Below, one piece after another: positions 2,523 through 64,000 of a stretch of DNA of 64,000 bases. The translations under genes were made by a program, and so were the position numbers. Under the pieces are notes generated by a model. That model saw only the letters and a list, made by a program, of their open reading frames with translations. It made no database searches and was not told where the DNA came from. Numbering within the stretch: position 1 is the first letter of the stretch; each line of letters starts with the position of its first letter. Location of the stretch: the IMG/VR virus record IMGVR_UViG_3300031951_000003, positions 248,001 through 312,000 of that record; one strand, written 5' to 3'.

Positions 2523-2584
2523 AAAAATTACATTTTGGCTCCGTTTTTCAATCCTGAATGAAACTTGTTTGTATTTATCTAAGT

Positions 2585-4720
2585 ATGTCAAATCCCGTTA
2601 TAATTATTGGTCAACAAAGAATTGTAAAAAAAACTGAGAAAATTTCTTTTTCCAATCCTACTGACTCTGTCATAACAATAAATTATCAGAAGAGTTCGAA
2701 TTTTCAGTGGGTTTACCAAGACGAAATACTACCTCAACAATCCAAAAGGATTTGGGCTGTTCCATCATCAATACAAATTCCAAATTACTTTTCTGAGAAT
2801 TTAGTTAGTCAAGATGACGGAGATATATTAAACATGATACAGACATATTCTTTGGGGGATGTTGTGAATGTCAACACCGAATCTTGTTATGTATATGAAT
2901 ACCCATATCCGTTTCCAGTCACTTTAAGAATTTCAAGTGAATATGCCTTACCACCCAACGTTAATATAGATTATAGAATTGCAACATACAATCCTCCTTA
3001 CATCGACCCAACAGTGTTCAACGGTATTCCTTGGACAAATTTAGTAACGAATTTTCAAGTTGGTGAGTGTCCCAATTATAACTTAGCAGGAACTGTTTAT
3101 ATCTCTTCTCCTTCTTTGGCTATCCAATATAGAGTGAGGGACTTATCTGACAATAGATTGAATTACTATTACATTATTTACCCTGAAACCTGTTTCGGAC
3201 CTGGAGAGGACCCTTGTAACATCAATTCAATACCTAGAATTTGGGACTTATTATTTTCTGGTTGTTCTATAGATGGTATTTCGATTTATTTATTTGAACC
3301 ATCCCAAATTCCCTTCGCTCAAGATGTTTGGATGGTATTGAAATCTCCTCCAGGAAACATAACCAACTGCACTACCCCAACTCCAACATCGACCGTTACA
3401 CAAACACCAACCAACACTCAAACACCAACAAATACTTCTACACAAACTCCAACGCCAACTAACACTCAAACACCTACCAACACCTCTACCCCGACTCCAA
3501 CGCCAACTAACACTCAAACACCTACCAACACTCAAACACCTACCAACACTCAAACACCTACACAGACCCCTCCTGTTTACTATTATTCAGCTCTTCTATG
3601 TGGGGACCCATCTTTCTTGAGATATTTCCGTTCGTCGAATCCAAATTTAACCGACAGTTGTTCTGTAATTTACGGTTATTGTGATGAGGCACCTCATACT
3701 GAATGTGGGGGAGTTCCTCAATGTTTTGATAATGTAAGCCCTTCGGTTGTCGTGAATTCGAATGATGTTTTAGAATGTTTCGATAGTTGTGAGTGTTGTC
3801 AGGGACTTTGTCCAACACCATCCCCAACTCCTACAATAAACCCGACCTCAACACCAACACCGACCACGACACCATCTCTAACCCCTACATTGACCTCAAC
3901 TCCTACATTAACTCCTACATCGACCTCGACCTCTACACCAACACCAACAACCAGTCCGACAGTCACAGGCACACTTACTCCTACACCAACACAAACGAGA
4001 CTTGCCGATTGTTATCAAAAAATTTATTTCGATGTAACATTAACTGAAACTTTTTTCAGTTACACAGATTGTTGTAGTGGAGAAGTAAATATCCTGAGCG
4101 TTGAAGCTGGTGTTGATTCTTGGGGTGCACCCGAGGGTTGTATAGAATATGGTTCAGTAACTGTTATTTCAGGTGAGTTCAATAATTTGTATTATAATTC
4201 ACCTTGTGCGTGTCCGACACCCACACCAACATTGACAGCCTCTAATACTCCAACTCCAACAACTACTAACACACCAACATTGACCGCTTCTAATACTCCA
4301 ACTCCAACAACTACTAGTACACCAACTAACTCACCAACAACTACCAACTCACCTACACCAACGCTTACACAGACTCCGACGGCCTCTGTAACTCAAACTC
4401 CTACACCAACACAAACAGAACCAACAGTTACACAGTCTGTAACACCATCTCAAACACCTACGCAATCATTTGTATTTTACCCTTATTCAGTTACCTCAGG
4501 ACAAACTTTTGTATCGATAGATTGTAATCCTGTTGTTTTAACTCAGACCTTATATGCCGCAGAATCAAGTTGGTATACAATTACCAAATTTTATTCAGAT
4601 TCAAACCTAACAACACCATACAATGGTAATGACTTGTATTATACCAACAACACTTTAGGTTCCTCCGATTGGTATAGAATCGCAACGAATGGTTCAATAA
4701 CTGATAGCTACGGTTGTTAA
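2585..4720 (+). CDS. Pro/Thr-rich (mucin-like), Cys-rich virion surface/fibre protein
   Basis: TPTPT/TQTPTN linkers separate Cys-rich modules; start moved to ATG 2585, 6 nt after TATTTAT. Confidence 0.75.
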   Translation: MSNPVIIIGQQRIVKKTEKISFSNPTDSVITINYQKSSNFQWVYQDEILPQQSKRIWAVPSSIQIPNYFSENLVSQDDGDILNMIQTYSLGDVVNVNTESCYVYEYPYPFPVTLRISSEYALPPNVNIDYRIATYNPPYIDPTVFNGIPWTNLVTNFQVGECPNYNLAGTVYISSPSLAIQYRVRDLSDNRLNYYYIIYPETCFGPGEDPCNINSIPRIWDLLFSGCSIDGISIYLFEPSQIPFAQDVWMVLKSPPGNITNCTTPTPTSTVTQTPTNTQTPTNTSTQTPTPTNTQTPTNTSTPTPTPTNTQTPTNTQTPTNTQTPTQTPPVYYYSALLCGDPSFLRYFRSSNPNLTDSCSVIYGYCDEAPHTECGGVPQCFDNVSPSVVVNSNDVLECFDSCECCQGLCPTPSPTPTINPTSTPTPTTTPSLTPTLTSTPTLTPTSTSTSTPTPTTSPTVTGTLTPTPTQTRLADCYQKIYFDVTLTETFFSYTDCCSGEVNILSVEAGVDSWGAPEGCIEYGSVTVISGEFNNLYYNSPCACPTPTPTLTASNTPTPTTTNTPTLTASNTPTPTTTSTPTNSPTTTNSPTPTLTQTPTASVTQTPTPTQTEPTVTQSVTPSQTPTQSFVFYPYSVTSGQTFVSIDCNPVVLTQTLYAAESSWYTITKFYSDSNLTTPYNGNDLYYTNNTLGSSDWYRIATNGSITDSYGC

Positions 4721-4758
4721 AAAAACAAAAAACCCCACCAGTAGAAACTGACGGGGTT
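4719..4758 (-). terminator. intrinsic terminator ending the ncRNA transcript
   Basis: AACCCCGTCAG-loop-CTGGTGGGGTT (11 bp; the two G-U pairs form only on the minus strand) followed by TTTTGTTTTTTT. Confidence 0.85.
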
Positions 4759-4768
4759 GGCAAAAAAC

Positions 4769-5589
4769 TCTGAGAATACAAGTTTTGGTGAGAATCTTTG
4801 GAAGGATTATGATTTCCCTTCGTTTCCACTTCCTTTTGAGAAGTAATCCTCAGTCACGGTCAATTAGATTAACCAATCCTTAAGTTGTGTACCACTCTCT
4901 CGTTACTCATCACTCTTCGAGGTTGCCACCCCAATTAATCCTTGCGGGATTAGAGAACTTTCAAGAAAATCCTGTCGGGCTTGGGACCCTTCAAGGCTAA
5001 GAACATCTCTTAACTATGTAGTGACCTGTCGCACACAACTGACGAGCACTTTTCCTTGTTTAATTTTGAGTTTGTTAAACCTTAATTAACAAAGTTGGTT
5101 TACGGATGATGAAAGTAGCGGCCCGTCTGAAGCCATGCCATCTTTTGGACGACACGATACTAAGCTACTCTCTGAAGTCTCCCGACCTCCATATTTTGAG
5201 TCAACTTCATAACTAACCTCTTGGTAGAGAGAAAGTTAAGGTTCCATCAGCACCACCTGTTATGAAACTTACCTTGTTCGGTGTTAAGCCAACTCTAATA
5301 TTGAATCACGCAATTACTATGGTGGATGCCATAGTTTCTTACATTAATCCTTCAGGTTATTCTTATTGGTGTTCCCACCTCAATCAAACGACCCGTATCG
5401 CTTGATTACCCAACCACGTTCCCTACAGTGTCACCCTCAGTACTAAAGGTCAGATAATATCCTGATTGCCTACTCGAGTTCCCTTTCGGAAACCGCAGAC
5501 CTCCCAAACCAGGGAGTTCCACTTTATACTATTTTCATAGTTTATTTAATGACCATAGGCGGCCAATATCTTGAACAGAATGTCTCAGA
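4769..5589 (-). ncRNA. large structured non-coding RNA, probably GOLLD-like
   Basis: No credible ORF; many hairpins closed by GNRA loops on the minus strand (GTTTCC-GAAA-GGGAAC, GGTG-GGAA-CACC, GAGGTC-GGGA-GACTTC, ACTAT-GAAA-ATAGT); two domains joined by an AU-rich linker; 7-bp terminal stem; own promoter and terminator; tRNA nearby. Confidence 0.7.
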
Positions 5590-5638
5590 ATAAACCCGAA
5601 GGTTTCATCATCAACTAACTGTGAAGATAATATCTTAA

Positions 5639-5650
5639 TTCAAAGAACTT
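5639..5650 (-). promoter_or_regulatory. boxA-like antitermination site
   Basis: AAGTTCTTTGAA between the promoter and the large RNA. Confidence 0.55.
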
Positions 5651-5728
5651 TCAAATTTAAAGGGAAGAAGAATCTTGACGACCATCCGAAGTTGGAACAC
5701 TTACAACTCCTCCCCTTCAATTGTTTCA

Positions 5729-5760
5729 CAAAGTTAAGACACGTTTTTGGAACTGTCAAA
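5729..5760 (-). promoter_or_regulatory. Bacteroidota sigma-A-type promoter P3
   Basis: TTTG-N20-TAACTTTG. Confidence 0.8.
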
Positions 5761-5842
5761 TCTTTTTGAAACTTTTTTTGACTTTTTCTGATTCGATTCT
5801 AATACCCCCCACTCTTAATGGGACAGGTTCAAATTCAGTCTT

Positions 5843-5869
5843 TGTCAAAGAACATACGACTCTCATCGT
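5843..5869 (-). promoter_or_regulatory. boxB-like hairpin plus boxA-like site
   Basis: ACGAT-GAGA-GTCGT hairpin followed by TGTTCTTTGACA. Confidence 0.55.
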
Positions 5870-5877
5870 GTGTTTTA

Positions 5878-5909
5878 CAAAGATAAGAAGGTTTTTTTAA
5901 ACTCTCAAA
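5878..5909 (-). promoter_or_regulatory. Bacteroidota sigma-A-type promoter P2
   Basis: TTTG-N20-TATCTTTG. Confidence 0.8.
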
Positions 5910-5920
5910 TCTTTTTTTTG

Positions 5921-5993
5921 TTGCGTCGCCTTGGAATCGAACCAAGCTAAGTGGGCTTATGAGACCCATGGAACACCTTGCCCCCCGCCCGCA
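5921..5993 (-). tRNA. tRNA with CAT anticodon (Met/fMet-like), aberrant acceptor stem, no encoded CCA
   Basis: T arm CTTGG-TTCGATT-CCAAG; anticodon arm TGGGT-CTCATAA-GCCCA; D stem GGGG/TTCC; acceptor TGCGGGC/GCGACGCA is imperfect. Confidence 0.75.
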
Positions 5994-5998
5994 ATATA

Positions 5999-6070
5999 AT
6001 GATTAACTCCTACTTACCCCTCGGTCACCTATCCACGTCATGCGCTGGTTGAACCAGCAGGAGTCATCAT
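5999..6070 (-). ncRNA. small structured RNA element of unknown type
   Basis: Closing stem ATGAT-GACTCCT...AGGAGTT-AATCAT encloses hairpin GCTGG-TTCAA-CCAGC; GC-rich; lies between a boxA-like site and the tRNA. Confidence 0.45.
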
Positions 6071-6114
6071 TTCAATATTTTTAAGAACTATGTTGTTTTG
6101 AAAAAGAAGTCCCA

Positions 6115-6146
6115 CAAATATACGGAGATTTTCTCAAATAACCAAA
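6115..6146 (-). promoter_or_regulatory. Bacteroidota sigma-A-type promoter P1
   Basis: TTTG-N20-TATATTTG; boxA-like AGTTCTTAAAAA at 6078-6089 downstream. Confidence 0.8.
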
Positions 6147-6276
6147 TTCGTGGGACTATTATTTCGAGATTACTCTTTTATTCATCTCGAGTGTTTGGGG
6201 TGTTCGTCCTCTCGGACATGAACATATAAATATTCCGAAAAGTTCAAAAAGTAACCCTAAGAAAAAATATTTTTTT

Positions 6277-6381
6277 TTAGTGGTCCAAATCGTCAACCAT
6301 TCTTCTGAGTTGTCTCATCATATCGAACCATCCTATGATTCCTATAACGATGACAAACATAATTAAACCTAATACAATCAT
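6277..6381 (-). CDS. small membrane protein (34 aa)
   Basis: MIVLGLIMFVIVIGIIGWFD...; ATGA overlap with the Nudix stop; not in the ORF track. Confidence 0.55.
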   Translation of the reverse strand: MIVLGLIMFVIVIGIIGWFDMMRQLRRMVDDLDH

Positions 6382-6797
6382 TGTAAAATAATTTCAGCTA
6401 ATTTATACATATAGTCACCTGTGTTTTCAGCACGGATTTCATCGAAACTGAAATACTTCCAATCAGTATGTTCTTCTCCGTCAATGGCTTTCTCGAAATC
6501 TGGTTCAATACATTCTTCAACAATTAACAAATACACATACATCAACCCTTTAACTTTTTTACCGTCACGAGTGTGTCTTGGAATGAGTCCAATAAAAGTA
6601 ATTTCTTGGTCATCGATACTAACCGCTGTTTCTTCGAAAAATTCGCGTTTGGCACCTTCTTGTGTTGTTTCATTTTCTTCGAGTTTTCCACCTGGAATCG
6701 ACCACATACCTGGGAAAGAACCGAGATTGTTTCTTTTACATAGTAAAACTTTATCCTTACATTTTACCATAATTCCTACATAGCTTTGTTGTTTCAT
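6378..6797 (-). CDS. Nudix hydrolase
   Basis: Nudix box GGKLEENETTQEGAKREFFEET. Confidence 0.9.
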   Translation of the reverse strand: MKQQSYVGIMVKCKDKVLLCKRNNLGSFPGMWSIPGGKLEENETTQEGAKREFFEETAVSIDDQEITFIGLIPRHTRDGKKVKGLMYVYLLIVEECIEPDFEKAIDGEEHTDWKYFSFDEIRAENTGDYMYKLAEIILQ

Positions 6798-6811
6798 TGT
6801 ATTTATTAAAT

Positions 6812-7159
6812 ATGATTGTTGAAATTAATGAAAATTATTTTAATGTTAAAACATTGGTTGACCCAAAATCCCAAGCTATTGGGATGATGAGAAGAAAATT
6901 CGATGATTCATTCAATGGTTTATTATTTTTAATGGGTGGTAAAAAACAATGTTTTTGGATGAAAAATTGTATCATCCCACTTGATATAATAATGATAAAA
7001 AATAATGTTATTGTCAATATACATCACGACTGTCCTCCTTGTTTAGAGGAACCTTGTCCGAGTTATTGTGGAAATGGAAATATCGTATTAGAACTCGAGG
7101 GTGGGACCTGTGAAATGTTAGGGATTGAAGCTGGAGATACGGTAGAATATATCTTCTAA
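6812..7159 (+). CDS. DUF192-family protein
   Basis: GMM..R...GLLF...FWMKNCIIPLDI...VLEL.GG...GDTV pattern; start revised to ATG 6812. Confidence 0.85.
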   Translation: MIVEINENYFNVKTLVDPKSQAIGMMRRKFDDSFNGLLFLMGGKKQCFWMKNCIIPLDIIMIKNNVIVNIHHDCPPCLEEPCPSYCGNGNIVLELEGGTCEMLGIEAGDTVEYIF

Positions 7160-9312
7160 ACTGTGAAATCTCTCACAAAAAATTTACTTGACCTCATTCT
7201 CAAAAATATTGTTTTTGGTTTCTCAGGCACTGTTCCAAAAAATGGTATTGTGGTTGAACCTATACTAATATCTGAAATACCACCTGCTTTAGCAACATCT
7301 ACTGCAAAGGTTGCACAATTCGAATCACCACCCTCTGTCAAATCTATGAATGAGTAACTTCTTGGTTTACTAGCCTCGTTCACAGAGTCTGTGAAATTAG
7401 GTAATCTCATAACATTTGTCCACATTGTTAGATTTGGACCGTCTTTGAAAGTTTTGGCTTTACAAGTTCTTGCAACATCACCAGCATTTGTGAAGTTTCC
7501 TTGTGAATCTATAGTCGCAATTTTCCCCATTTCAGTTTTCAAAACCTTTCCGTTTCCATCGTTATCGTAAGGTCCAAACTCATATAATTTTACAATACCT
7601 GTATGGTCAACTAAAATACAACCTCCATGTCCAGTGGCATATATTTTGATTTCTCTCTTTCCAACTTGTTCATTCAAACCTAAATAATCCTCTACCCACT
7701 CCAATGCTCTTCCGTGGAATGCTAATATGCGAGCAATCCAAGAATCTGTCATTGAAGGTCTATATTTCGGAAAAACAAAGAACATAAAAAAACCTGATTG
7801 ATTTTTGTCTATGGGTTGAAGTGACTTAAAAACAAAATCATCCTTCTGTCTTGCAATTGATAAACTTGGTACTCTAATGTCCCCCGAAGAGGGATTGTAC
7901 TGTTCCTCCAATTTTGACTCAGATTGAGAAATTTTTTCCTTTAACTTTCTGAAGAAATCTGAAGCCAACATTTTTGTAAATTTTACATATGGTGCATCTT
8001 CTCTTTCAGGGTCATATCTATATTGACCTTCGGGTGGTCTTTTGGACCTACCAAGATAGTTCAATCCACTTATATTCGTGATACACTTGTGACCTCCAGA
8101 GTTTGCGTTGATTAATTCCCAAGCACTTACATTAATATTATCTAAGATACTTTTTTCTTCATCTGTTAATGATGTAAATGGTTTTGACATCATTTCTTTA
8201 AGTCTATTCAAAGCCTCTTCTCCTCTTTCTTGTTCTGCAAATTTTTCACCATAAACCGCATTAAAATCCTCGAATGTAAACCCAACACTTTCAGGGTTAA
8301 CACCTGTTTCACTAATCCATTTTATCGTTGATAACGGGACTTTTCTTTCCTTGAGTTGAGCTTCATACTTTGCAATGACCTCTTTAGCAATCTCTCCGAG
8401 ATTAACACCTTTGAGCTTCCTTTCCTTTTTAAAAGGATTGCATGATACTTGAAGTAATCCCATCGGCCATGCCATGATGAGAAAGTCTGCTTCAGGGTTA
8501 TTTCTAAATGGGGTATACCTGTCATAAGAGCCAGGCTTAACCATACTACCTCCACCATATTGGTAAATGATATTATCTTCAACATGGGGAAATCCTTTCA
8601 TTTGTTTTGCATAATCTTGTGCGTGTTTTTGTAGTTCTTCTGGTTTTGGTGCATTTGTATCTTTCATCCATGTTTTGATGTTACTAAGTATATTCATCAA
8701 AGATGGTTCTGAATTCATTACAAGTCGCTCCAAAAATCCTTTCTTGTTTTTGAATGCTAAAATGAGTTTGTTTATAACGAAACCCAATAACATTTTGTTT
8801 CTTTGTAACGGCTTTTCTTTATCTAATCTAAAAAGATAATTGACTACCTCCTCGGGACTTATATCTTGTCTAGCGAAATCTGCGGAGTCAACAGTGTTAA
8901 TCAATAAAACGTCAGATGAGGGAAATAAATCTTTGGGTGAAATTATTTGTGAGATTGTTTCCACGTTTGAACGTGCTTGTCTAAATGATTTCGAAGCACC
9001 TTTTTCCGCACCTATTTGTTTGTCATGATGGTCCGTGTGGATAACGAACATTGGTTTACCATGAGCAAAGTCAACCAAAACAGGCATGGTATCACCCTTA
9101 GCGTCATTCTTCTTAACCGCAAATTCTTTTTCCCCATATTGTATTACGTGAACATCTACCACATCAATACCATTGTTCTCAAGGTATTTTTTCATCGCAA
9201 TAGCAGTAGTTACACCATCTAAATCTTGGTGGAAATATATTTCAGCCTTCGGGTATCTTTTTCTTAATGCGGAAATATCTCTTAAACCTGTCTCAGTTAT
9301 TAGGTTCTTCAT
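7156..9312 (-). CDS. DHH-family phosphoesterase fused to a C-terminal His...Asn-Cys (permuted papain-like) domain
   Basis: HQDLDG, LVDF, TDHH and GGH motifs; C-terminal GHGG...YEFGPY...SNCATF. Confidence 0.7.
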   Translation of the reverse strand: MKNLITETGLRDISALRKRYPKAEIYFHQDLDGVTTAIAMKKYLENNGIDVVDVHVIQYGEKEFAVKKNDAKGDTMPVLVDFAHGKPMFVIHTDHHDKQIGAEKGASKSFRQARSNVETISQIISPKDLFPSSDVLLINTVDSADFARQDISPEEVVNYLFRLDKEKPLQRNKMLLGFVINKLILAFKNKKGFLERLVMNSEPSLMNILSNIKTWMKDTNAPKPEELQKHAQDYAKQMKGFPHVEDNIIYQYGGGSMVKPGSYDRYTPFRNNPEADFLIMAWPMGLLQVSCNPFKKERKLKGVNLGEIAKEVIAKYEAQLKERKVPLSTIKWISETGVNPESVGFTFEDFNAVYGEKFAEQERGEEALNRLKEMMSKPFTSLTDEEKSILDNINVSAWELINANSGGHKCITNISGLNYLGRSKRPPEGQYRYDPEREDAPYVKFTKMLASDFFRKLKEKISQSESKLEEQYNPSSGDIRVPSLSIARQKDDFVFKSLQPIDKNQSGFFMFFVFPKYRPSMTDSWIARILAFHGRALEWVEDYLGLNEQVGKREIKIYATGHGGCILVDHTGIVKLYEFGPYDNDGNGKVLKTEMGKIATIDSQGNFTNAGDVARTCKAKTFKDGPNLTMWTNVMRLPNFTDSVNEASKPRSYSFIDLTEGGDSNCATFAVDVAKAGGISDISIGSTTIPFFGTVPEKPKTIFLRMRSSKFFVRDFTV

Positions 9313-43705: not shown

Positions 43706-44503
43706 TTACATGTAGTCGAACAAACTACCCGTTTCATTCCTAAGTTTTCTGAGGGCTTTTTCTTTGATTTGTCTAACCCTTTCCTTAGTTAAATCAAAGT
43801 CATTACCAATATCTTCTAATGTTCTTGTTGAGCCAGATAACCCGAAATAATCTTGGATGATTACCTTTTCTCTTTCATCGAGAACATCGAGAAGTGAAAG
43901 TAATTTATCTTTAAGTGTTTGCTCTGAAGAAAGTCCTGAGTCCGCACTTTCAGCATTTGGATTTGGAACAACATCCAAAAGCGTATCTCCCTCTTCGTTA
44001 AGTGGGCTATCCAAGTTCACAATAGATGGTAGGTTGAGAAACTTCTCAGGAAGTTCAGTCCCCACCTTGTCAAGTTCTTTTTTCGCCTTATGTAGTTCTT
44101 GAACCACATTTACTGGTAGTCGAATTGTTCTAGCATTTTCATTCAAGGATTGAAGTATGGATTGTCTAATCCACCACACAGCGTATGATATGAATCTAAG
44201 ATTTTTTGACCAATCAAAATTCTCAATCGCTTTCATAAGACCATAATTACCTTCAGCGATAAGGTCAGGTAAATCTAACCCTTGGTTTTGATATTGTTTG
44301 GAAACAGTAATCACAAACCTTAAGTTACCCTCGAGAATTTCTTTTTTTATTTCTTCCTTCTCTTGGATTGAGATTCTACCTGATAACATTTTTCTAGAAA
44401 GTTCTCTTTCTCTCTCTACCGTCATTACCTTAAGTTTTCTTACTTCTTTAAGGTAGGCGTTAATTTCTTCCTGATTAATTGGGATTACACTTTTTTCCTT
44501 CAT
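43706..44503 (-). CDS. sigma-70 family RNA polymerase sigma factor, Bacteroidota RpoD-like (no region 1.1)
   Basis: NLRFV...QGLDLPDLIAEGN.GL.KA; RFISYAVWWIRQSI; TLEDIG..FDLTKERVRQIKEKAL. Confidence 0.93.
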   Translation of the reverse strand: MKEKSVIPINQEEINAYLKEVRKLKVMTVERERELSRKMLSGRISIQEKEEIKKEILEGNLRFVITVSKQYQNQGLDLPDLIAEGNYGLMKAIENFDWSKNLRFISYAVWWIRQSILQSLNENARTIRLPVNVVQELHKAKKELDKVGTELPEKFLNLPSIVNLDSPLNEEGDTLLDVVPNPNAESADSGLSSEQTLKDKLLSLLDVLDEREKVIIQDYFGLSGSTRTLEDIGNDFDLTKERVRQIKEKALRKLRNETGSLFDYM

Positions 44504-60218: not shown

Positions 60219-61559
60219 TTATGAACATCCACCACAATCTACGCTATCAGTGCAAATAGTTACACTACTACAAGGTTGAATTGATGTAACCCCACCTGAA
60301 AAATCACCCGACCCAGCTCGGATGCACCTTTCGACTTTTGAACCTGCAGAAAGTGGTTCACCAACTACTGAACCATCACATAAAGTATATTGTATTGTTG
60401 AACCCACAACATCTTGATTTTCAAAGTAATAACACAAACATGGACAAACATAAGTTCCACAAGAGCTTATATCATCGAAATTAGTTATTGCCACTACAAC
60501 ACCATTTAAGATTTCCATAACATAAAGTGGTGGTGACGATATATCAGGATTTGCTGGATACGTAGATGGTCCGTATACATATTTTCCTGTAAGAGTTGTG
60601 TTTACAAAAAATATTCCAAAAAGATTATAATATAATTGACTGCCAGGTCCTAAAGTAGTTGAAGAATTGTAATAATACCCTGCGTTTCCATCTACCTCAA
60701 CTAATGGGTCGAAAGCTTCTATAAAATCACATTTCACTTCTTCTTTTGTTTTTGATGTCCAATTTATTTCTGACCCACATATAGTTGCCCCATATGATAA
60801 AAGAAACTCAACAAATGAAGGTGTAACCGTTGGCGTTTGTGAAGGGGTTTCTGTTTGGGTAGGAGTTTGAGGAGGTGTTTCAGATTGGGTAGGAGTTTGG
60901 GTTTGGGATGGAGTTTGAGTTTGTGTTGGTGTCGATGGAACACAAAGTGAAAAAGATACTATTTTACCTTGGGAATCAATTACCACTTGATATAATGTTC
61001 CTCCGAAAGAAATGATATATGTGTTCCCACCCCCATTCAAAGGGTTATATAATACCCCGTTTAGAAGTGTTTGGTAAATTGTGGCACCTACAACAGGGAC
61101 TAAATTTGCCTCTGAAATGTATGTATAATAACCTGTTAGATTGAGTGGTGATGAACAACTATCAGCTGTCGGGTGAAAAACAACAAGAGGTGTTGCGGTT
61201 GGTGTTGATGATATAGTTGCTGTATTCGAGGTAGTGGGTGAATTTGTTGGTGTCATGGATGGCGTTTGGGTTGGTGACAAGGTAGGTGAATACGACGGGG
61301 TTGGTGTCATGGTTGGGGTTTTAGTGACATTTGGTGTTGGTGTGGGAGTTATATCTATAGGAATCTCATCAATACAACCTTGGGTATCTTCAATTTTAAT
61401 AACAATTGTTGATTCACTATATGGTGATGGGACATAGAATGAGAATGGAAATGTTGCAACCGACGCAACAAATTGACAGTCGCCACCACCCGAGTTACAA
61501 TAATATATGTCAACTGGTGTATTTGCAGTTACAGATTGGATAGTTACAAATTGACTCAT
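60219..61559 (-). CDS. Pro/Thr-rich, Cys-rich tail/surface protein
   Basis: TPT linkers; N-terminal domain paralogous to 61556-61774; start revised to 61559. Confidence 0.75.
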   Translation of the reverse strand: MSQFVTIQSVTANTPVDIYYCNSGGGDCQFVASVATFPFSFYVPSPYSESTIVIKIEDTQGCIDEIPIDITPTPTPNVTKTPTMTPTPSYSPTLSPTQTPSMTPTNSPTTSNTATISSTPTATPLVVFHPTADSCSSPLNLTGYYTYISEANLVPVVGATIYQTLLNGVLYNPLNGGGNTYIISFGGTLYQVVIDSQGKIVSFSLCVPSTPTQTQTPSQTQTPTQSETPPQTPTQTETPSQTPTVTPSFVEFLLSYGATICGSEINWTSKTKEEVKCDFIEAFDPLVEVDGNAGYYYNSSTTLGPGSQLYYNLFGIFFVNTTLTGKYVYGPSTYPANPDISSPPLYVMEILNGVVVAITNFDDISSCGTYVCPCLCYYFENQDVVGSTIQYTLCDGSVVGEPLSAGSKVERCIRAGSGDFSGGVTSIQPCSSVTICTDSVDCGGCS

Positions 61560-61774
61560 GCTACATAAGTTACTCCTGAGATTATGCAATTCTGCGAATC
61601 AATTACTTTCAACATGTAAGCCAGTCCAGTATCATATGGTTGTGGTATATCAAAATCATATGGAAGAGTTGTTATAGTATTAATATAAAAGCAACCACTA
61701 CCGTTTGGTTGACAGATATAAATGTCAAATGGTGATTGTCCTGTTATACCATTTATTGTAACTTGAACTGCCAT
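61556..61774 (-). CDS. small beta-rich structural module
   Basis: VTINGITGQSPFDIYIC...C...LPYDF.IP.PY...KVIDSQNC. Confidence 0.75.
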   Translation of the reverse strand: MAVQVTINGITGQSPFDIYICQPNGSGCFYINTITTLPYDFDIPQPYDTGLAYMLKVIDSQNCIISGVTYVA

Positions 61775-61775
61775 C

Positions 61776-64000
61776 TTATGTTGTTCGTTTTATAAAAATT
61801 TTATACAAAGTTCCTGTCACTGATGGGAAAACAATTGTGTAACATCCTACAAGAGGTTTGTAATTGAATGGTGGATTTGTAAGTTGAACTGAATTCAACA
61901 CGAAACCGCCATACTTGTTACATTCAACAACTTTTGTTGTTTGTGAGTTACCTGAAAGGAGATACCAAGTTCCACTGACATCAACAAACCCACATTGTGC
62001 ACCGTAACGAATGTATTGTCCGAATTCATTACCAATATCAAACGGAAGGGTGGTTAGGTTAATTTCATCAGGTGTGCTAGATAAGACGAAGTTCATATTA
62101 TAAGTTCCGTCTCCATTATTTTCCAAACTTACATTCAAATAAACCTCAACTTCATCAACACTACTCAAACACGTATCACAACTCAAATAGGTTTTATCAG
62201 GTGCTGAAGCAAAGTAATCTCCATCGAATCTTTGTGAGGTTGCAATTTTGATAGGTGCAAAATAATTACAATCAAATTCACCCTCATAGGTCCAACAATT
62301 TCCATCAGCATCTTTAAATTGTCTTCCAACTGTAGTCTGTATTGGTGATTGTTGTGTTTGAATCATATATGTTCTGACTGTATTTGGACTAATTGGAATA
62401 CAACTTGAATAAACATATACCAAACAAGGGGTTTCACTTGGCGTTGGGGTCATCGTTGAAGTAGGACTATAAGACGGTGTTTGTGATGGAGTCTGAGTTT
62501 GGGTTGGCGTTGATGAATAACTTGGCCTTGGTGTTGCTGTTGGTGTAAGACCAGGAGTTGTTGTCTGTGTTGGAGTTGGCGTGAATGTAGGAGTCGAGGA
62601 CGAAGTTTGTGTCGGCGTAATTGTCATCGTTGGTGTTGATGTAGGTGTTGATGTTATCGTCGTTGAAGGTGATGGTGAAGGGACTGTTGAACATTTCGAA
62701 CAATCGTTTCCAAAAATATCAATTATCGAGTCTACGTTCGTGTTAGATGATAAGTTTGAATCATCCCTCAAATACTTCAAGCAAAGAATTGTTTCATTAA
62801 TAACCGCCGAGAATACCATCTCAGTTTGGATTGGAATTTCCTCAAACACAAGTGGGTCAGAAGTGTAGAAATAATTTTCAGTTCCACATTGATTCAATAC
62901 CTTAACCGAAACACAACTGAATGTTTCTTCAAATATATTGAAGGTAACTTGTCCATCCGCAGGAACTGTTCTTGTCAGTGTTATCGTTGGTGTGTTTGAA
63001 GGGGTTGGGGTTGAATCAGGAACATAATTAATCTCAAAGTCGACACTTTTCCCAAGACATATCAATCCTGTTGGTGATGGAGTTGGCGTTACACCTATGG
63101 AAGTGAAAATGAAATTCACATCGTCACAAGGAACTGACGGACTTGGTGTTGGGACTGGTTCCCAATCACAGTCAAAGTATGCATTGAAATCGAAGGTGTC
63201 ACAATTTATTGGCGTTGGAGTTGGAGTTGGACAAACTCCTGGTTCAAAAGAACCGAAAGATATATCAGGACACGCAGAGTAACATGGAGACGAGCCCTTC
63301 AATAAACAAGTCCCACCGAGAGAGGTGCTCAGACACCAATAACTCTCAGTAACTGATGTAAAATAATAAATGTAACCCAAGCTGACGCTTCCACCAGAAT
63401 AGGAGATTCTACCATTATAAGTTGCACCTGAAACGTAAAGTCCATTGTAATTCAACAAAGAAGGTAGGGTTGTAGTAAAGCAAAATTCACCCGAATCACA
63501 AGCCGCTGGTGTCGAAGATACTGTCGGAGTGTTTGTTGGTGTTGAATACGGGGTTGGCGTTGGTGTGTTCAATAGACAAGCTCTACAACTACCCCAATCA
63601 GGTGCACCCAAATCAGGTCCACCAGGACCTGAAAACTCTTCGAATCTATAACATCTATTGTTATATTCATAAACCGCTCCTTGATAAGCGGTATCTTCAT
63701 CAACATTGGCATAAAATATTTCTTCAGTGGAACAGTCAATCAATAATGCAGCAACACTCGCAACTCTTGGACAAAGTGTAGAACCGCAACCTGTTACATT
63801 TGTAAATGTAACCGATGTTCCATCATATATTGGACCACTTCCCGAATCAACAACTGTCGCACATCCTTCATATTCTGTAGAACCTGTGATAAGATAGACA
63901 TCGTCAACCACAACTGCAACTGGTAAATCCTCAAATCTGAATAAAGTCCCTGAAACACAATCACGGAACCCTATTAGGTTTTGTGTCGGTGTTTGAGTGT
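61776..64000 (-). CDS. Pro/Thr-rich, Cys-rich tail/surface protein (5'-partial)
   Basis: Frame stays open from 63911 to the window end; TPT linkers with Cys modules. Confidence 0.8.

What the first reader, a model, noticed from the sequence alone, without database searches (positions are those of the whole stretch)
4769..5589. ~820-nt giant structured RNA (GOLLD-like) in a Bacteroidota jumbo phage
Seen: an ORF-free stretch, more GC-rich than the flanks, with many minus-strand hairpins. GNRA loops close several (GAAA, GGAA, GGGA, GCAA), a UUCG hairpin lies just upstream, and others include ACTATGG/CCATAGT, AATCAAGCGAT/GTCGTTTGATT and GTGTCGTC/GATGGCAT. A 7-bp TCTGAGA/TCTCAGA stem joins both ends. 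An AU-rich linker (~5055-5100) separates 5' and 3' domains. A strand-specific terminator follows. Established: GOLLD RNAs are ~800 nt, two-domain, phage- and tRNA-associated, of unknown function and reported to form multimeric cages. The family assignment is from memory of size, layout and the 3' end (…CTCAAAAGGAAGTGGAAACGAAGGGAAATCATAATCCTTCC…), so it could instead be a new class.
Basis: partly seen in the sequence, partly recalled or inferred. Interest (0 to 1): 0.82.

Follow-up and report, generated by a model that had tools for sequence, protein, structure and literature searches.

The report
GOLLD RNA in freshwater jumbo phage
This stretch encodes a GOLLD RNA, a known ~800-nt phage RNA whose solved members build hollow RNA-only cages; it is a well-supported and abundantly expressed new example in a ~320-kb lake phage, not a new kind of RNA.

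Summary
Rfam's GOLLD model (RF02032) matches window 5172-4767 on the minus strand over its full length, at 322 bits against a cut-off of 150. That model covers only the 3' domain. The 5' half (5566-5173) has homologues in 96 of 120 GOLLD-bearing viral contigs. By eye it is collinear with GOLLD env-38, the member solved by cryo-EM. In 69 diverse sequences both domains show heavy compensatory change: about 96% of cells are paired, and 87 of 110 and 74 of 99 pairs change on both sides.

Three freshwater metatranscriptomes hold this RNA at word depths of 50-1100, against about zero on the flanking phage genes. So it is an abundant, discrete RNA.

The window is 100% identical to viral contigs of 321 and 317 kb, which makes the phage a jumbo phage. 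A Bacteroidota host is supported only indirectly.

One detail fails. The 7-bp stem "joining both ends" shows no covariation. Its 3' arm is the invariant L27 loop, and its 5' arm lies in a variable leader.

The RNA core is about 5566-4767 (800 nt). It is transcribed from a TTTG/TAACTTTG promoter at 5760-5729 and ends at the terminator 4758-4731. No canonical tRNA is nearby, only a degenerate tRNA-like element with a CAU anticodon.

This is a new member of a known kind.

The parts
5729..5760 (-). Likely promoter of the GOLLD unit: -33 TTTG, 20-nt spacer, -7 TAACTTTG (the Bacteroidota sigma-A type). The inferred transcription start is near 5725.
   Evidence: Pattern match. The window holds 9 such motifs, all on the minus strand, against 3.9 +/- 1.7 in shuffles. 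TAnnTTTG lies within 260 nt upstream of 58 of 69 related GOLLDs, against a background of 0.24 per 260 nt. Not tested experimentally.
5567..5728 (-). 5' leader, variable between relatives. It holds a long hairpin at 5720-5657, a second -7-like box TAAATTTG at 5660-5653, the conserved GTTCTTTG at 5648-5641 and a UUCG hairpin at 5605-5592. It is probably trimmed from the mature RNA.
   Evidence: Fold and alignment A1. Exact-match RNA contigs have depth 2.4-4.4 over 5638-5853, against 99-200 over the core. The env-38 cryo-EM construct starts at the equivalent of about 5566.
5173..5566 (-). GOLLD 5' domain (P1-P13 in the published numbering). Rfam does not model it.
   Evidence: nhmmer finds homologues in 96 of 120 GOLLD loci. 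Of 110 consensus pairs, 96.2% of cells are paired and 87 pairs change on both sides. Slid controls give 32-41 such pairs and the best of 200 shuffles gives 68. By eye it is collinear with env-38.
4767..5172 (-). GOLLD 3' domain (P14-P27), the part that Rfam RF02032 models.
   Evidence: 322.1 bits against a gathering score of 150, E = 1.9e-91, model 1-416 of 416. Of 99 pairs, 95.6% of cells are paired and 74 pairs change on both sides; slid controls give 30-44.
5048..5110 (-). AU-rich variable linker (J13/15). It is closed by the covarying helix 5127-5121 / 5047-5041. Here it is too short to hold a tRNA.
   Evidence: Unpaired region of the Rfam alignment. The closing helix shows GC/AU/CG/UA exchanges. 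The equivalent env-38 region (nt 497-538) is disordered and faces the cage interior (PMC12286853).
4917..4951 (-). Two adjacent hairpins that I equate with P21a and P21b. Their loops carry the self-complementary dinucleotide GC (CGCAAG at 4946-4941; GGCAA around 4927-4923). They are candidate inter-chain kissing loops.
   Evidence: Across A1 the first loop switches between GC, CG and AU, all of them palindromic. The second loop keeps GC. This matches the published argument for bridges B8 and B9. I assigned the names by sequence, not from the published figure.
5391..5396 (-). Hairpin loop ACGGGU, which pairs with AUCCGU at 5107-5102, the start of the linker. This is a covarying long-range loop-junction contact.
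   Evidence: Six pairs with GC<->AU, UA<->CG and GU<->AU exchanges and almost no unpaired cells. Sequence alone cannot say whether the contact is within one chain or between chains.
4852..4857 (-). 3' arm of a covarying long-range helix whose 5' arm is 5026-5021.
   Evidence: The same pairing appears in the published covariation table (reference positions 576-580 with 743-747).
4731..4758 (-). Intrinsic terminator of the GOLLD unit: a 12-bp stem, a 4-nt loop and a T-run.
   Evidence: At least 21 of 69 relatives have a similar terminator. Others have a tRNA-Met gene 5-20 nt after the GOLLD 3' end instead.
5922..5993 (-). Degenerate tRNA-like element with anticodon loop CUCAUAA (CAU), upstream of GOLLD. 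It is not a recognisable tRNA gene.
   Evidence: ARAGORN at default settings finds nothing and calls it only at a lowered threshold. The best tRNA-clan match in Rfam, to the tRNA-Sec model, scores only 14.2 bits, E = 6, and the general tRNA model gives no match. Nine relatives keep the anticodon arm (98% paired) and the T arm (96%) but not the acceptor stem (64%).

Best explanation
Window ~5566-4767 on the minus strand encodes a GOLLD RNA (Rfam RF02032) of the same architectural type as env-38, the member solved by cryo-EM.

Shown:
- It belongs to the family.
- Both domains have a conserved, covarying secondary structure.
- The gene sits as its own unit between a promoter-like motif and a strand-specific terminator, in a ~320-kb phage genome.
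- In lake metatranscriptomes the core is far more abundant than the neighbouring phage genes and than its own leader.

Inferred:
- Transcription starts near 5725 from the TTTG/TAACTTTG promoter. Some read-through comes from the units upstream.
- The ~160-nt leader is removed.
- The ~800-nt RNA folds into a 5' 'cap' domain and a 3' 'ring' domain joined by a floppy AU-rich linker.
- As env-38 does in vitro, copies join through kissing loops and A-minor contacts into a closed homo-oligomeric cage, with the linkers inside. For this architecture a 14-mer is the expectation.

Hypothesis only:
- The cage serves the phage's takeover of translation. It may hold or shield tRNA-like RNAs or other translation components during late infection.
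For: Family membership: full-length Rfam hit at 322 bits. Twelve of 12 relatives tested also score 231-326 bits.

5' domain: homologous in 96 of 120 loci. By eye it is collinear, segment by segment, with the env-38 construct sequence, and the construct's ends map to window ~5566 and 4767.

Covariation: both domains far exceed the slid and shuffled controls.

Kissing loops: the loop I equate with L21a switches among palindromic dinucleotides (GC, CG, AU). The loop I equate with L21b keeps GC. This is the published signature of the inter-half-shell bridges.

Architecture type: the P11a-c sub-hairpins and both P21 hairpins are present. These are the elements reported to distinguish the 14-mer env-38 from the 12-mer S. 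agalactiae GOLLD (PMC12990946).

Expression: RNA contigs in three independent freshwater metatranscriptomes cover ~4823-5567 at word depths of 50-1100. Coverage is 0 over 3000-4669 and at most 1.5 over 6006-8000. A DNA run covers the whole 5 kb at 12-26 outside the GOLLD region, and higher within it.

Strand and unit boundaries: fold z-scores, terminator, promoter motif.

Link to translation: tRNA-Met(CAU) genes abut GOLLD in about 30 relatives, and tmRNA genes lie nearby in several.
Against: - Cage assembly and stoichiometry were not tested for this sequence. The oligomer number is known to differ between GOLLDs (10, 12 or 14).
- The loop that is a conserved GAAA in most relatives (L11a by my assignment) is GAACAA here.
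- The comparison with env-38 was by eye only. I could not obtain env-38 as a referenced sequence.
- The RNA evidence comes from assembled contigs. They carry no strand information, their depths are summed over near-identical strains, and nothing covers 4767-4822. The exact ends are therefore unknown, and the contig end at 5567 could be an assembly break.
- No canonical tRNA lies within the 64 kb, so any role tied to adjacent tRNAs has no local partner apart from a degenerate tRNA-like element.
- No experiment anywhere has established a biological function for GOLLD.
Confidence: 0.9

Rival explanations
1. It is a new class of giant structured RNA that only resembles GOLLD in size and layout.
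For: Rfam models only the 3' half, so the 5' half is formally unassigned by Rfam. GenBank phage genomes hold no similar DNA.
Against: The full-length GOLLD hit is more than twice the gathering score. The 5' half is homologous to the 5' halves of 96 other loci that carry the same GOLLD 3' domain. It is also collinear by eye with the 5' domain of env-38 GOLLD.
Confidence: 0.01
2. GOLLD here is mainly part of a precursor-processing device. It is made as one unit of a multi-RNA transcript together with tRNA-like RNAs, and its role is to control the maturation, storage or release of those small RNAs. It is not an autonomous cage with other cargo.
For: In about 20 relatives a tRNA-Met(CAU) gene starts 5-20 nt after the GOLLD 3' end, with no terminator between them. 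In the window, low-level RNA contigs (5638-5853) run across the GOLLD promoter region, which suggests read-through from the upstream units. Some published GOLLDs carry a tRNA inside the linker, and an 'inhibited storage' idea has been proposed for them (PMC12990946).
Against: In this window GOLLD has its own promoter motif and its own terminator. The linker holds no tRNA, and no canonical tRNA lies within 64 kb. The core is 20-80 times more abundant than the upstream RNA, which suggests a stable end product rather than a by-product of processing.
Confidence: 0.15
3. The abundant structured RNA acts as a decoy or shield during infection. It could soak up host ribosomes, RNases or RNA-sensing defence proteins, and cage formation would be incidental.
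For: Abundance is very high relative to the phage mRNAs. Kretsch et al. cite pull-down assays in which bacterial ribosomes bind GOLLD. The family is widespread in lytic-looking phage contigs, many of them over 200 kb.
Against: Nothing in the window bears on this directly. The palindromic loop dinucleotides and the conservation of whole-domain architecture point to selection on assembly itself.
Confidence: 0.1
4. It is a ribozyme or mobile RNA (group I or II intron, RNase P-like), or a protein-coding or cis-regulatory region.
For: It is large and has many GNRA loops, as large ribozymes do.
Against: No such Rfam family reaches threshold anywhere in the window. Below threshold there are only chance-level hits: L10 leader at 28 bits and manA at 17.7 bits. 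No stop-free stretch longer than 74 aa exists. The next gene downstream is convergent, so there is nothing for the region to regulate in cis.
Confidence: 0.01

Closest known systems
GOLLD env-38 (marine metagenome; cryo-EM 14-mer, PDB 9MEE; Kretsch et al., Nature 2025, PMC12286853)
   Same: The order of helices is the same through the whole 5' domain, including the three P11 sub-hairpins. The 3' domain has both P21 hairpins. An AU-rich linker follows P14. The 3' end is the same GUAUUCUCAG loop. Length is 800 nt against 833. A CAU-anticodon element lies upstream: env-38 sits downstream of a Met-tRNA gene, and this one sits downstream of a degenerate tRNA-like CAU element.
   Different: The source is a freshwater phage, not a marine one. 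The short hairpin that carries the GAAA loop in env-38 (GGGGAAACCCC) is missing: most relatives have ACC-GAAA-GGU at that position, and this RNA has ACC-GAACAA-GGU. The upstream element is not a functional-looking tRNA. The comparison was by eye only, and assembly of this RNA is untested.
Rfam RF02032 GOLLD family (Weinberg et al. 2009), including prophage copies in Lactobacillales and the copies in Mycobacterium tRNA arrays
   Same: The conserved 3' domain matches at 322 bits. The location in a phage and the two-domain layout also agree.
   Different: Many described members sit inside tRNA arrays or carry a tRNA in the linker. This one has no canonical tRNA within 64 kb. Its 5' domain type was almost absent from 185,579 species-representative genomes: the only match was a 744-bp contig of a MAG.
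Streptococcus agalactiae GOLLD (700 nt; cryo-EM dodecamer, PDB 9L0R)
   Same: Same family and the same 3' domain core.
   Different: The S. agalactiae RNA lacks P9, P11a-c and P21b. The window's RNA has counterparts of all three. Its architecture therefore follows env-38, not this one.
ROOL RNA (RF03087)
   Same: Phage-associated, often near tRNAs, has a variable internal linker and forms RNA-only cages.
   Different: Its sequence and fold are unrelated, and there is no ROOL hit in the window.

Membership tests
GOLLD RNA (Rfam RF02032) | A match to the family covariance model at or above the curated gathering score | tested here: met
   322.1 bits against 150, E = 1.9e-91, model 1-416 of 416, window 5172-4767 on the minus strand.
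GOLLD RNA (Rfam RF02032) | Conserved 3' domain secondary structure (P14-P27) kept by compensatory changes | tested here: met
   Of 99 pairs, 95.6% of cells are paired and 74 pairs change on both sides, in 69 sequences. Slid controls give 30-44 and the best shuffle 59. The helices agree with the published covariation table.
GOLLD RNA (Rfam RF02032) | A large, less conserved 5' domain (P1-P13) upstream of the 3' domain, giving a total of ~700-830 nt | tested here: met
   5566-5173 is homologous in 96 of 120 loci. Of 110 pairs, 96.2% of cells are paired and 87 pairs change on both sides. It is collinear by eye with env-38. The core is 800 nt.
GOLLD RNA (Rfam RF02032) | A variable, unstructured linker (J13/15) after P14 | tested here: met
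   The AU-rich stretch 5110-5048 aligns to the unpaired part of the model. Its length and sequence vary in A1. It is closed by the covarying helix 5127-5121 / 5047-5041.
GOLLD RNA (Rfam RF02032) | Located in a phage or prophage | tested here: met
   Tail-fibre, primase, SbcC-like, exonuclease and sigma-factor PHROG hits. The window is identical to IMG/VR viral contigs of 317-321 kb.
GOLLD RNA (Rfam RF02032) | Proximity to tRNA genes. This is a frequent association, not a strict requirement. | tested here: not met
   ARAGORN finds 0 tRNAs in 64 kb. The only candidate is a degenerate tRNA-like CAU element at 5993-5922. In relatives the association holds: 44 of 95 loci have a tRNA or tmRNA gene within 600 nt on the same strand, most often tRNA-Met(CAU).
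GOLLD RNA (Rfam RF02032) | Self-complementary loops that form the inter-chain kissing contacts (L21a, L21b) | tested here: met
   The loops at 4946-4941 and ~4927-4923 carry GC. The first varies only among the palindromes GC, CG and AU across A1. This follows the published argument. I assigned the loop names by sequence.
GOLLD RNA (Rfam RF02032) | Assembly into a homo-oligomeric RNA-only cage | not testable with these tools
   Needs in vitro transcription followed by mass photometry or cryo-EM. Inferred here only from homology to env-38.
GOLLD RNA (Rfam RF02032) | Expressed as an abundant RNA, reported to rise during phage-induced lysis | tested here: inconclusive
   It is abundant in three freshwater metatranscriptomes while the flanking genes are at about 0. 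The data are assembled contigs, so there is no strand, no exact ends and no time course.
Other large RNAs (ROOL, OLE, group I/II introns, RNase P, tmRNA) | A match to the family covariance model at the gathering score | tested here: not met
   GOLLD was the only family reaching threshold in the whole window on either strand.

The most novel reading that the evidence does not exclude
GOLLD is the last of three tandem non-coding RNA units at 6146-4731. Each unit has its own Bacteroidota-type promoter motif. The last two also share a leader cassette (AAACA, a hairpin, then GTTCTTTG) that recurs at fixed spacing in relatives. Under this reading, the neighbouring non-canonical tRNA-like CAU RNA is a dedicated partner or cargo of the GOLLD cage and not a decaying tRNA gene. 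That element belongs to a conserved family whose anticodon and T arms covary, whose acceptor-stem base is persistently unpaired, and which the Rfam tRNA model misses. This would tie the cage to initiator or Met-tRNA biology.
Probability: 0.1. Interest if true: 0.6.

Novelty: new member of a known kind. Interest (0 to 1): 0.3.

Why it matters
GOLLD is one of the largest bacterial or phage non-coding RNAs. It has a solved and unusual cage structure, yet still no known function.

This copy adds no new principle. It does offer useful material:
- It shows that the env-38-type architecture, 5' domain included, is common in uncultivated freshwater phages. Several of the contigs exceed 200 kb.
- It supplies a 69-sequence alignment that supports the 5' domain by covariation. 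The published covariation table covered only the 3' domain.
- It shows that in natural lake communities the RNA is present at far higher levels than the neighbouring phage transcripts.
- The recurring tie to tRNA-Met(CAU) genes and the shared promoter-leader cassette are testable leads on how GOLLD is made and what it acts on.

Tried and rejected
- blastn of 4720-5760 against 50,697 GenBank phage records gave no match. No cultivated phage relative is available.
- A scan of 185,579 species-representative genomes for a 5'-domain motif found only a 744-bp contig binned with a Methylocystis MAG. That gives no host information.
- Two attempts to fetch env-38 or a near relative as a referenced locus, one in viral and one in metagenome contigs, found nothing. 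No formal alignment to the solved RNA was made. I compared the printed sequence by eye and did not paste it into any tool.
- tblastn of the phage sigma factor and the SbcC-like protein against GenBank phages gave only distant hits from mixed hosts. The host remains unresolved.
- RNAalifold proposed a 4-bp pairing CUUU (5645-5642) with AAAG (4799-4796). Both sides are nearly invariant, so it is uninformative.
- Several other 'new' long-range runs from my covariation scan were set aside as weak: 5498-5495/5465-5462, 5417-5414/5002-4999 and 5258-5253/5118-5113.
- The sub-threshold Rfam hits (L10 leader, manA, SmY, rivX, fluoride) are treated as chance.
- ARAGORN and the Rfam tRNA model do not call the upstream tRNA-like element, so I do not count it as a tRNA gene.

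Full report
**What is there.** An Rfam scan of the whole window at gathering thresholds returned one hit: GOLLD (RF02032). It lies at 5172-4767 on the minus strand, scores 322.1 bits against a cut-off of 150, has E = 1.9e-91 and covers model positions 1-416 of 416. The Rfam model covers only the conserved 3' half of GOLLD, so the 5' half had to be assessed separately.

**Checking the observation.**
- The non-coding gap runs from 4721 to 6377, with no stop-free stretch longer than 74 aa.
- GC content is 0.42 in the RNA, against 0.364 for the window.
- The minus strand folds much better than shuffles (z = -3.79, 0 of 20 as good). The plus strand does not (z = -0.07).
- A strand-specific terminator lies at 4758-4731.
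- The UUCG hairpin (5605-5592) is real but lies in the leader.

**Homologues.** The 3' half hit 111. Sixty-nine distinct full-length sequences were aligned as A1. They are 54-69% identical to the window, apart from one relative at 83%. Twelve of 12 loci checked carry full-length Rfam GOLLD hits at 231-326 bits.

**Covariation.** I computed an RNAalifold consensus on A1 and counted pairs.

| Domain | Pairs | Cells paired | Pairs changed on both sides | Slid controls | Best of 200 shuffles |
|---|---|---|---|---|---|
| 5' (5566-5173) | 110 | 96.2% | 87 | 32-41 (36-43% paired) | 68 (79.5% paired) |
| 3' (5172-4767) | 99 | 95.6% | 74 | 30-44 | 59 |

A scan for non-nested covarying runs added three helices:
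- a helix that closes the linker (5127-5121 / 5047-5041);
- a long-range helix (5026-5021 / 4857-4852);
- a loop-junction contact (5396-5391 / 5107-5102).

The first two are also in the published covariation table. That table covers only reference positions 422-832, so the 5'-domain support obtained here goes beyond it.

**The one failed detail.** The 3' arm is the loop GUAUUCUCA, whose UCUCA core never changes in the 69 sequences. The 5' arm lies in a variable leader that many relatives lack or have in a different form. No compensatory change occurs. In the solved structure this loop (L27) makes contacts inside the 3' domain.

**Relation to the solved GOLLD.** The env-38 construct sequence is printed in the supplement of Kretsch et al. 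(Nature 2025, PMC12286853). Read side by side, the window and env-38 are collinear from the first hairpin (UGGCCGCCUAUGGUCA against UGGCCGCUAUGGUCG). The match continues through every 5'-domain segment, P14, the linker and the 3' domain, to the last loop. The ends of the construct correspond to window ~5566 and 4767, which gives an 800-nt core against 833 nt. I could not fetch env-38 as a referenced sequence, so this comparison is by eye only.

Two loops that I equate with L21a and L21b carry self-complementary dinucleotides. In A1 the first loop varies only among GC, CG and AU. This is the published signature of inter-chain kissing. The window also has counterparts of P9, P11a-c and P21b. These are the elements reported to separate the 14-mer env-38 from the 12-mer S. 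agalactiae GOLLD (PMC12990946). One small difference: the loop that is a conserved GAAA in most relatives is GAACAA here.

**Expression.** The exact sequence occurs in many lake and freshwater metagenomes, and six freshwater metatranscriptome runs hold about half of its sampled words. I laid three RNA runs and one DNA run on window 3000-8000.
- The RNA contigs cover ~4823-5567 at word depths of 50-1100.
- Coverage is 0 over 3000-4669 and at most 1.5 over 6006-8000.
- The DNA run covers the whole stretch at 12-26 outside the GOLLD region, and higher within it.
- Among exact-match contigs, the core has depth 99-200 and the leader and upstream region (5638-5853) has 2.4-4.4.

DNA carry-over would not produce this pattern. 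It indicates an abundant, stable RNA whose leader is under-represented. There are three caveats. Contigs carry no strand information. Depths pool near-identical strains. The stretch 4767-4822 is not covered, and the contig end at 5567 may be an assembly break.

**Transcription unit.** A full -33 TTTG / -7 TAACTTTG motif lies at 5760-5729. The window holds nine such motifs, all on the minus strand, against 3.9 +/- 1.7 in shuffles. TAnnTTTG lies upstream of 58 of 69 related GOLLDs, usually about 35 nt before a conserved GTTCTTTG. In the window the leader hairpin between the two (5720-5657) is larger than in relatives. At the 3' end, relatives have either a terminator like the one here (at least 21 of 69) or a tRNA-Met(CAU) gene starting 5-20 nt after GOLLD.

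**Context.** The window is 100% identical to stretches of five IMG/VR contigs from different samples. Two of them are 321,139 and 317,210 bp long. It encodes collagen-like tail fibres, DNA methyltransferases, a sigma factor, an SbcC-like nuclease, an exonuclease and a primase. It is therefore a jumbo phage. Support for a Bacteroidota host is indirect: the promoter type and one SprB repeat. Protein searches against GenBank phages did not resolve the host.

ARAGORN finds no tRNA in the 64 kb. The element at 5993-5922 is a tRNA-like RNA with a CAU anticodon loop, good anticodon and T arms, and a broken acceptor stem.

**How it most likely works.**
- Shown: family membership, structure, genomic unit and abundance.
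- Inferred by homology: trimming of the leader, the two-domain fold, and self-assembly into a closed cage with the linker inside. A 14-mer is expected for this architecture.
- Not known: the function. My preferred guess is a role in the phage's handling of translation components, based on the recurrent tRNA-Met and tmRNA neighbours and the ribosome pull-down cited. It remains a hypothesis.

**Novelty.** The family, its structure and its association with phages are published. GOLLD-like hits in Flavobacterium and Bacteroides genomes already appear in the published alignment. This copy is a new member of a known kind. The searched literature held no paper combining the term 'GOLLD RNA' with the jumbo or huge-phage terms or with metatranscriptomes.

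Noticed in passing
window 6146-6115, 5909-5878 and 5760-5729 (minus strand); GTTCTTTG at 5853-5846 and 5648-5641: Three Bacteroidota-type promoter motifs lie in tandem ahead of three short non-coding units. Units 2 and 3 share a leader cassette: AAACA, a hairpin, then GTTCTTTG(A). In relatives the -7 box sits a near-constant ~35 nt upstream of GTTCTTTG. This may be a shared signal for the expression or processing of phage non-coding RNAs.
   Followed up: partly
window 5993-5922 (minus strand); relatives in L001, L091, L028, L037, L039, L087, L013, L050, L016 (alignment A2): This is a family of non-canonical tRNA-like RNAs with the anticodon loop CUCAUAA. The anticodon arm (98% paired) and the T arm (96%) covary. 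The acceptor stem is only 64% paired, and position 5-68 is unpaired in 8 of 9. ARAGORN calls some copies. The Rfam tRNA model misses the copies tested: the window's, L037's and L016's.
   Followed up: partly
window 6108-5997 (minus strand): This intergenic stretch, just after the first promoter motif, lies within a 200-nt match that is 89% identical to relative L036. That is better conserved than GOLLD itself (84%). It folds into a long irregular hairpin of -25 kcal/mol. It could be another small RNA, and no Rfam family matches it.
   Followed up: partly
window 5871-5770 (minus strand): Unit 2, between the second and third promoter motifs, is about 100 nt long with a predicted fold of -24 kcal/mol. 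Only L036 has a recognisable homologue. Low-level RNA contigs (depth 2-4) cover it and run on into the GOLLD leader.
   Followed up: partly
window 5260-5248 (minus strand): The nearly invariant 5'-domain segment ACAGGUGGUGCUG matches the conserved core of the Rfam manA motif letter for letter. The overall hit is far below threshold, at 17.7 bits against 55.2.
   Followed up: no
L005, L017, L021, L024, L026, L033, L037, L081: Phage-encoded tmRNA genes lie within a few hundred to about 1,500 nt of GOLLD in several related contigs. In about 20 loci, tRNA-Met(CAU) genes start 5-20 nt after the GOLLD 3' end.
   Followed up: partly
window ~4760-4755 (minus strand) and the 3' flanks of about 16 of 69 relatives: A GCCA(A) motif follows the GOLLD 3' end by 6-15 nt. 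It comes just before either the terminator or the adjacent tRNA gene.
   Followed up: no
window 2558-4720 (+), especially 4208-4404: The convergent 720-aa ORF has a repeat-rich, strongly skewed region. One otherwise identical viral contig (L101) lacks 197 nt of it (4208-4404), which suggests length variation. The ORF matches only PHROG 15511, of unknown function, as do the ORFs at 60219-61589 and 61776-63911.
   Followed up: no
window 43706-44503 (minus strand): The phage encodes its own sigma-70-family factor (PHROG 351, E = 2e-56). It may be what reads the TAnnTTTG promoters.
   Followed up: no
L121 (JALRFG010000269.1, 744 bp): The only species-representative genome contig carrying the 5'-domain motif is a 744-bp fragment binned with a Methylocystis MAG. 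It is probably a mis-binned phage fragment.
   Followed up: no
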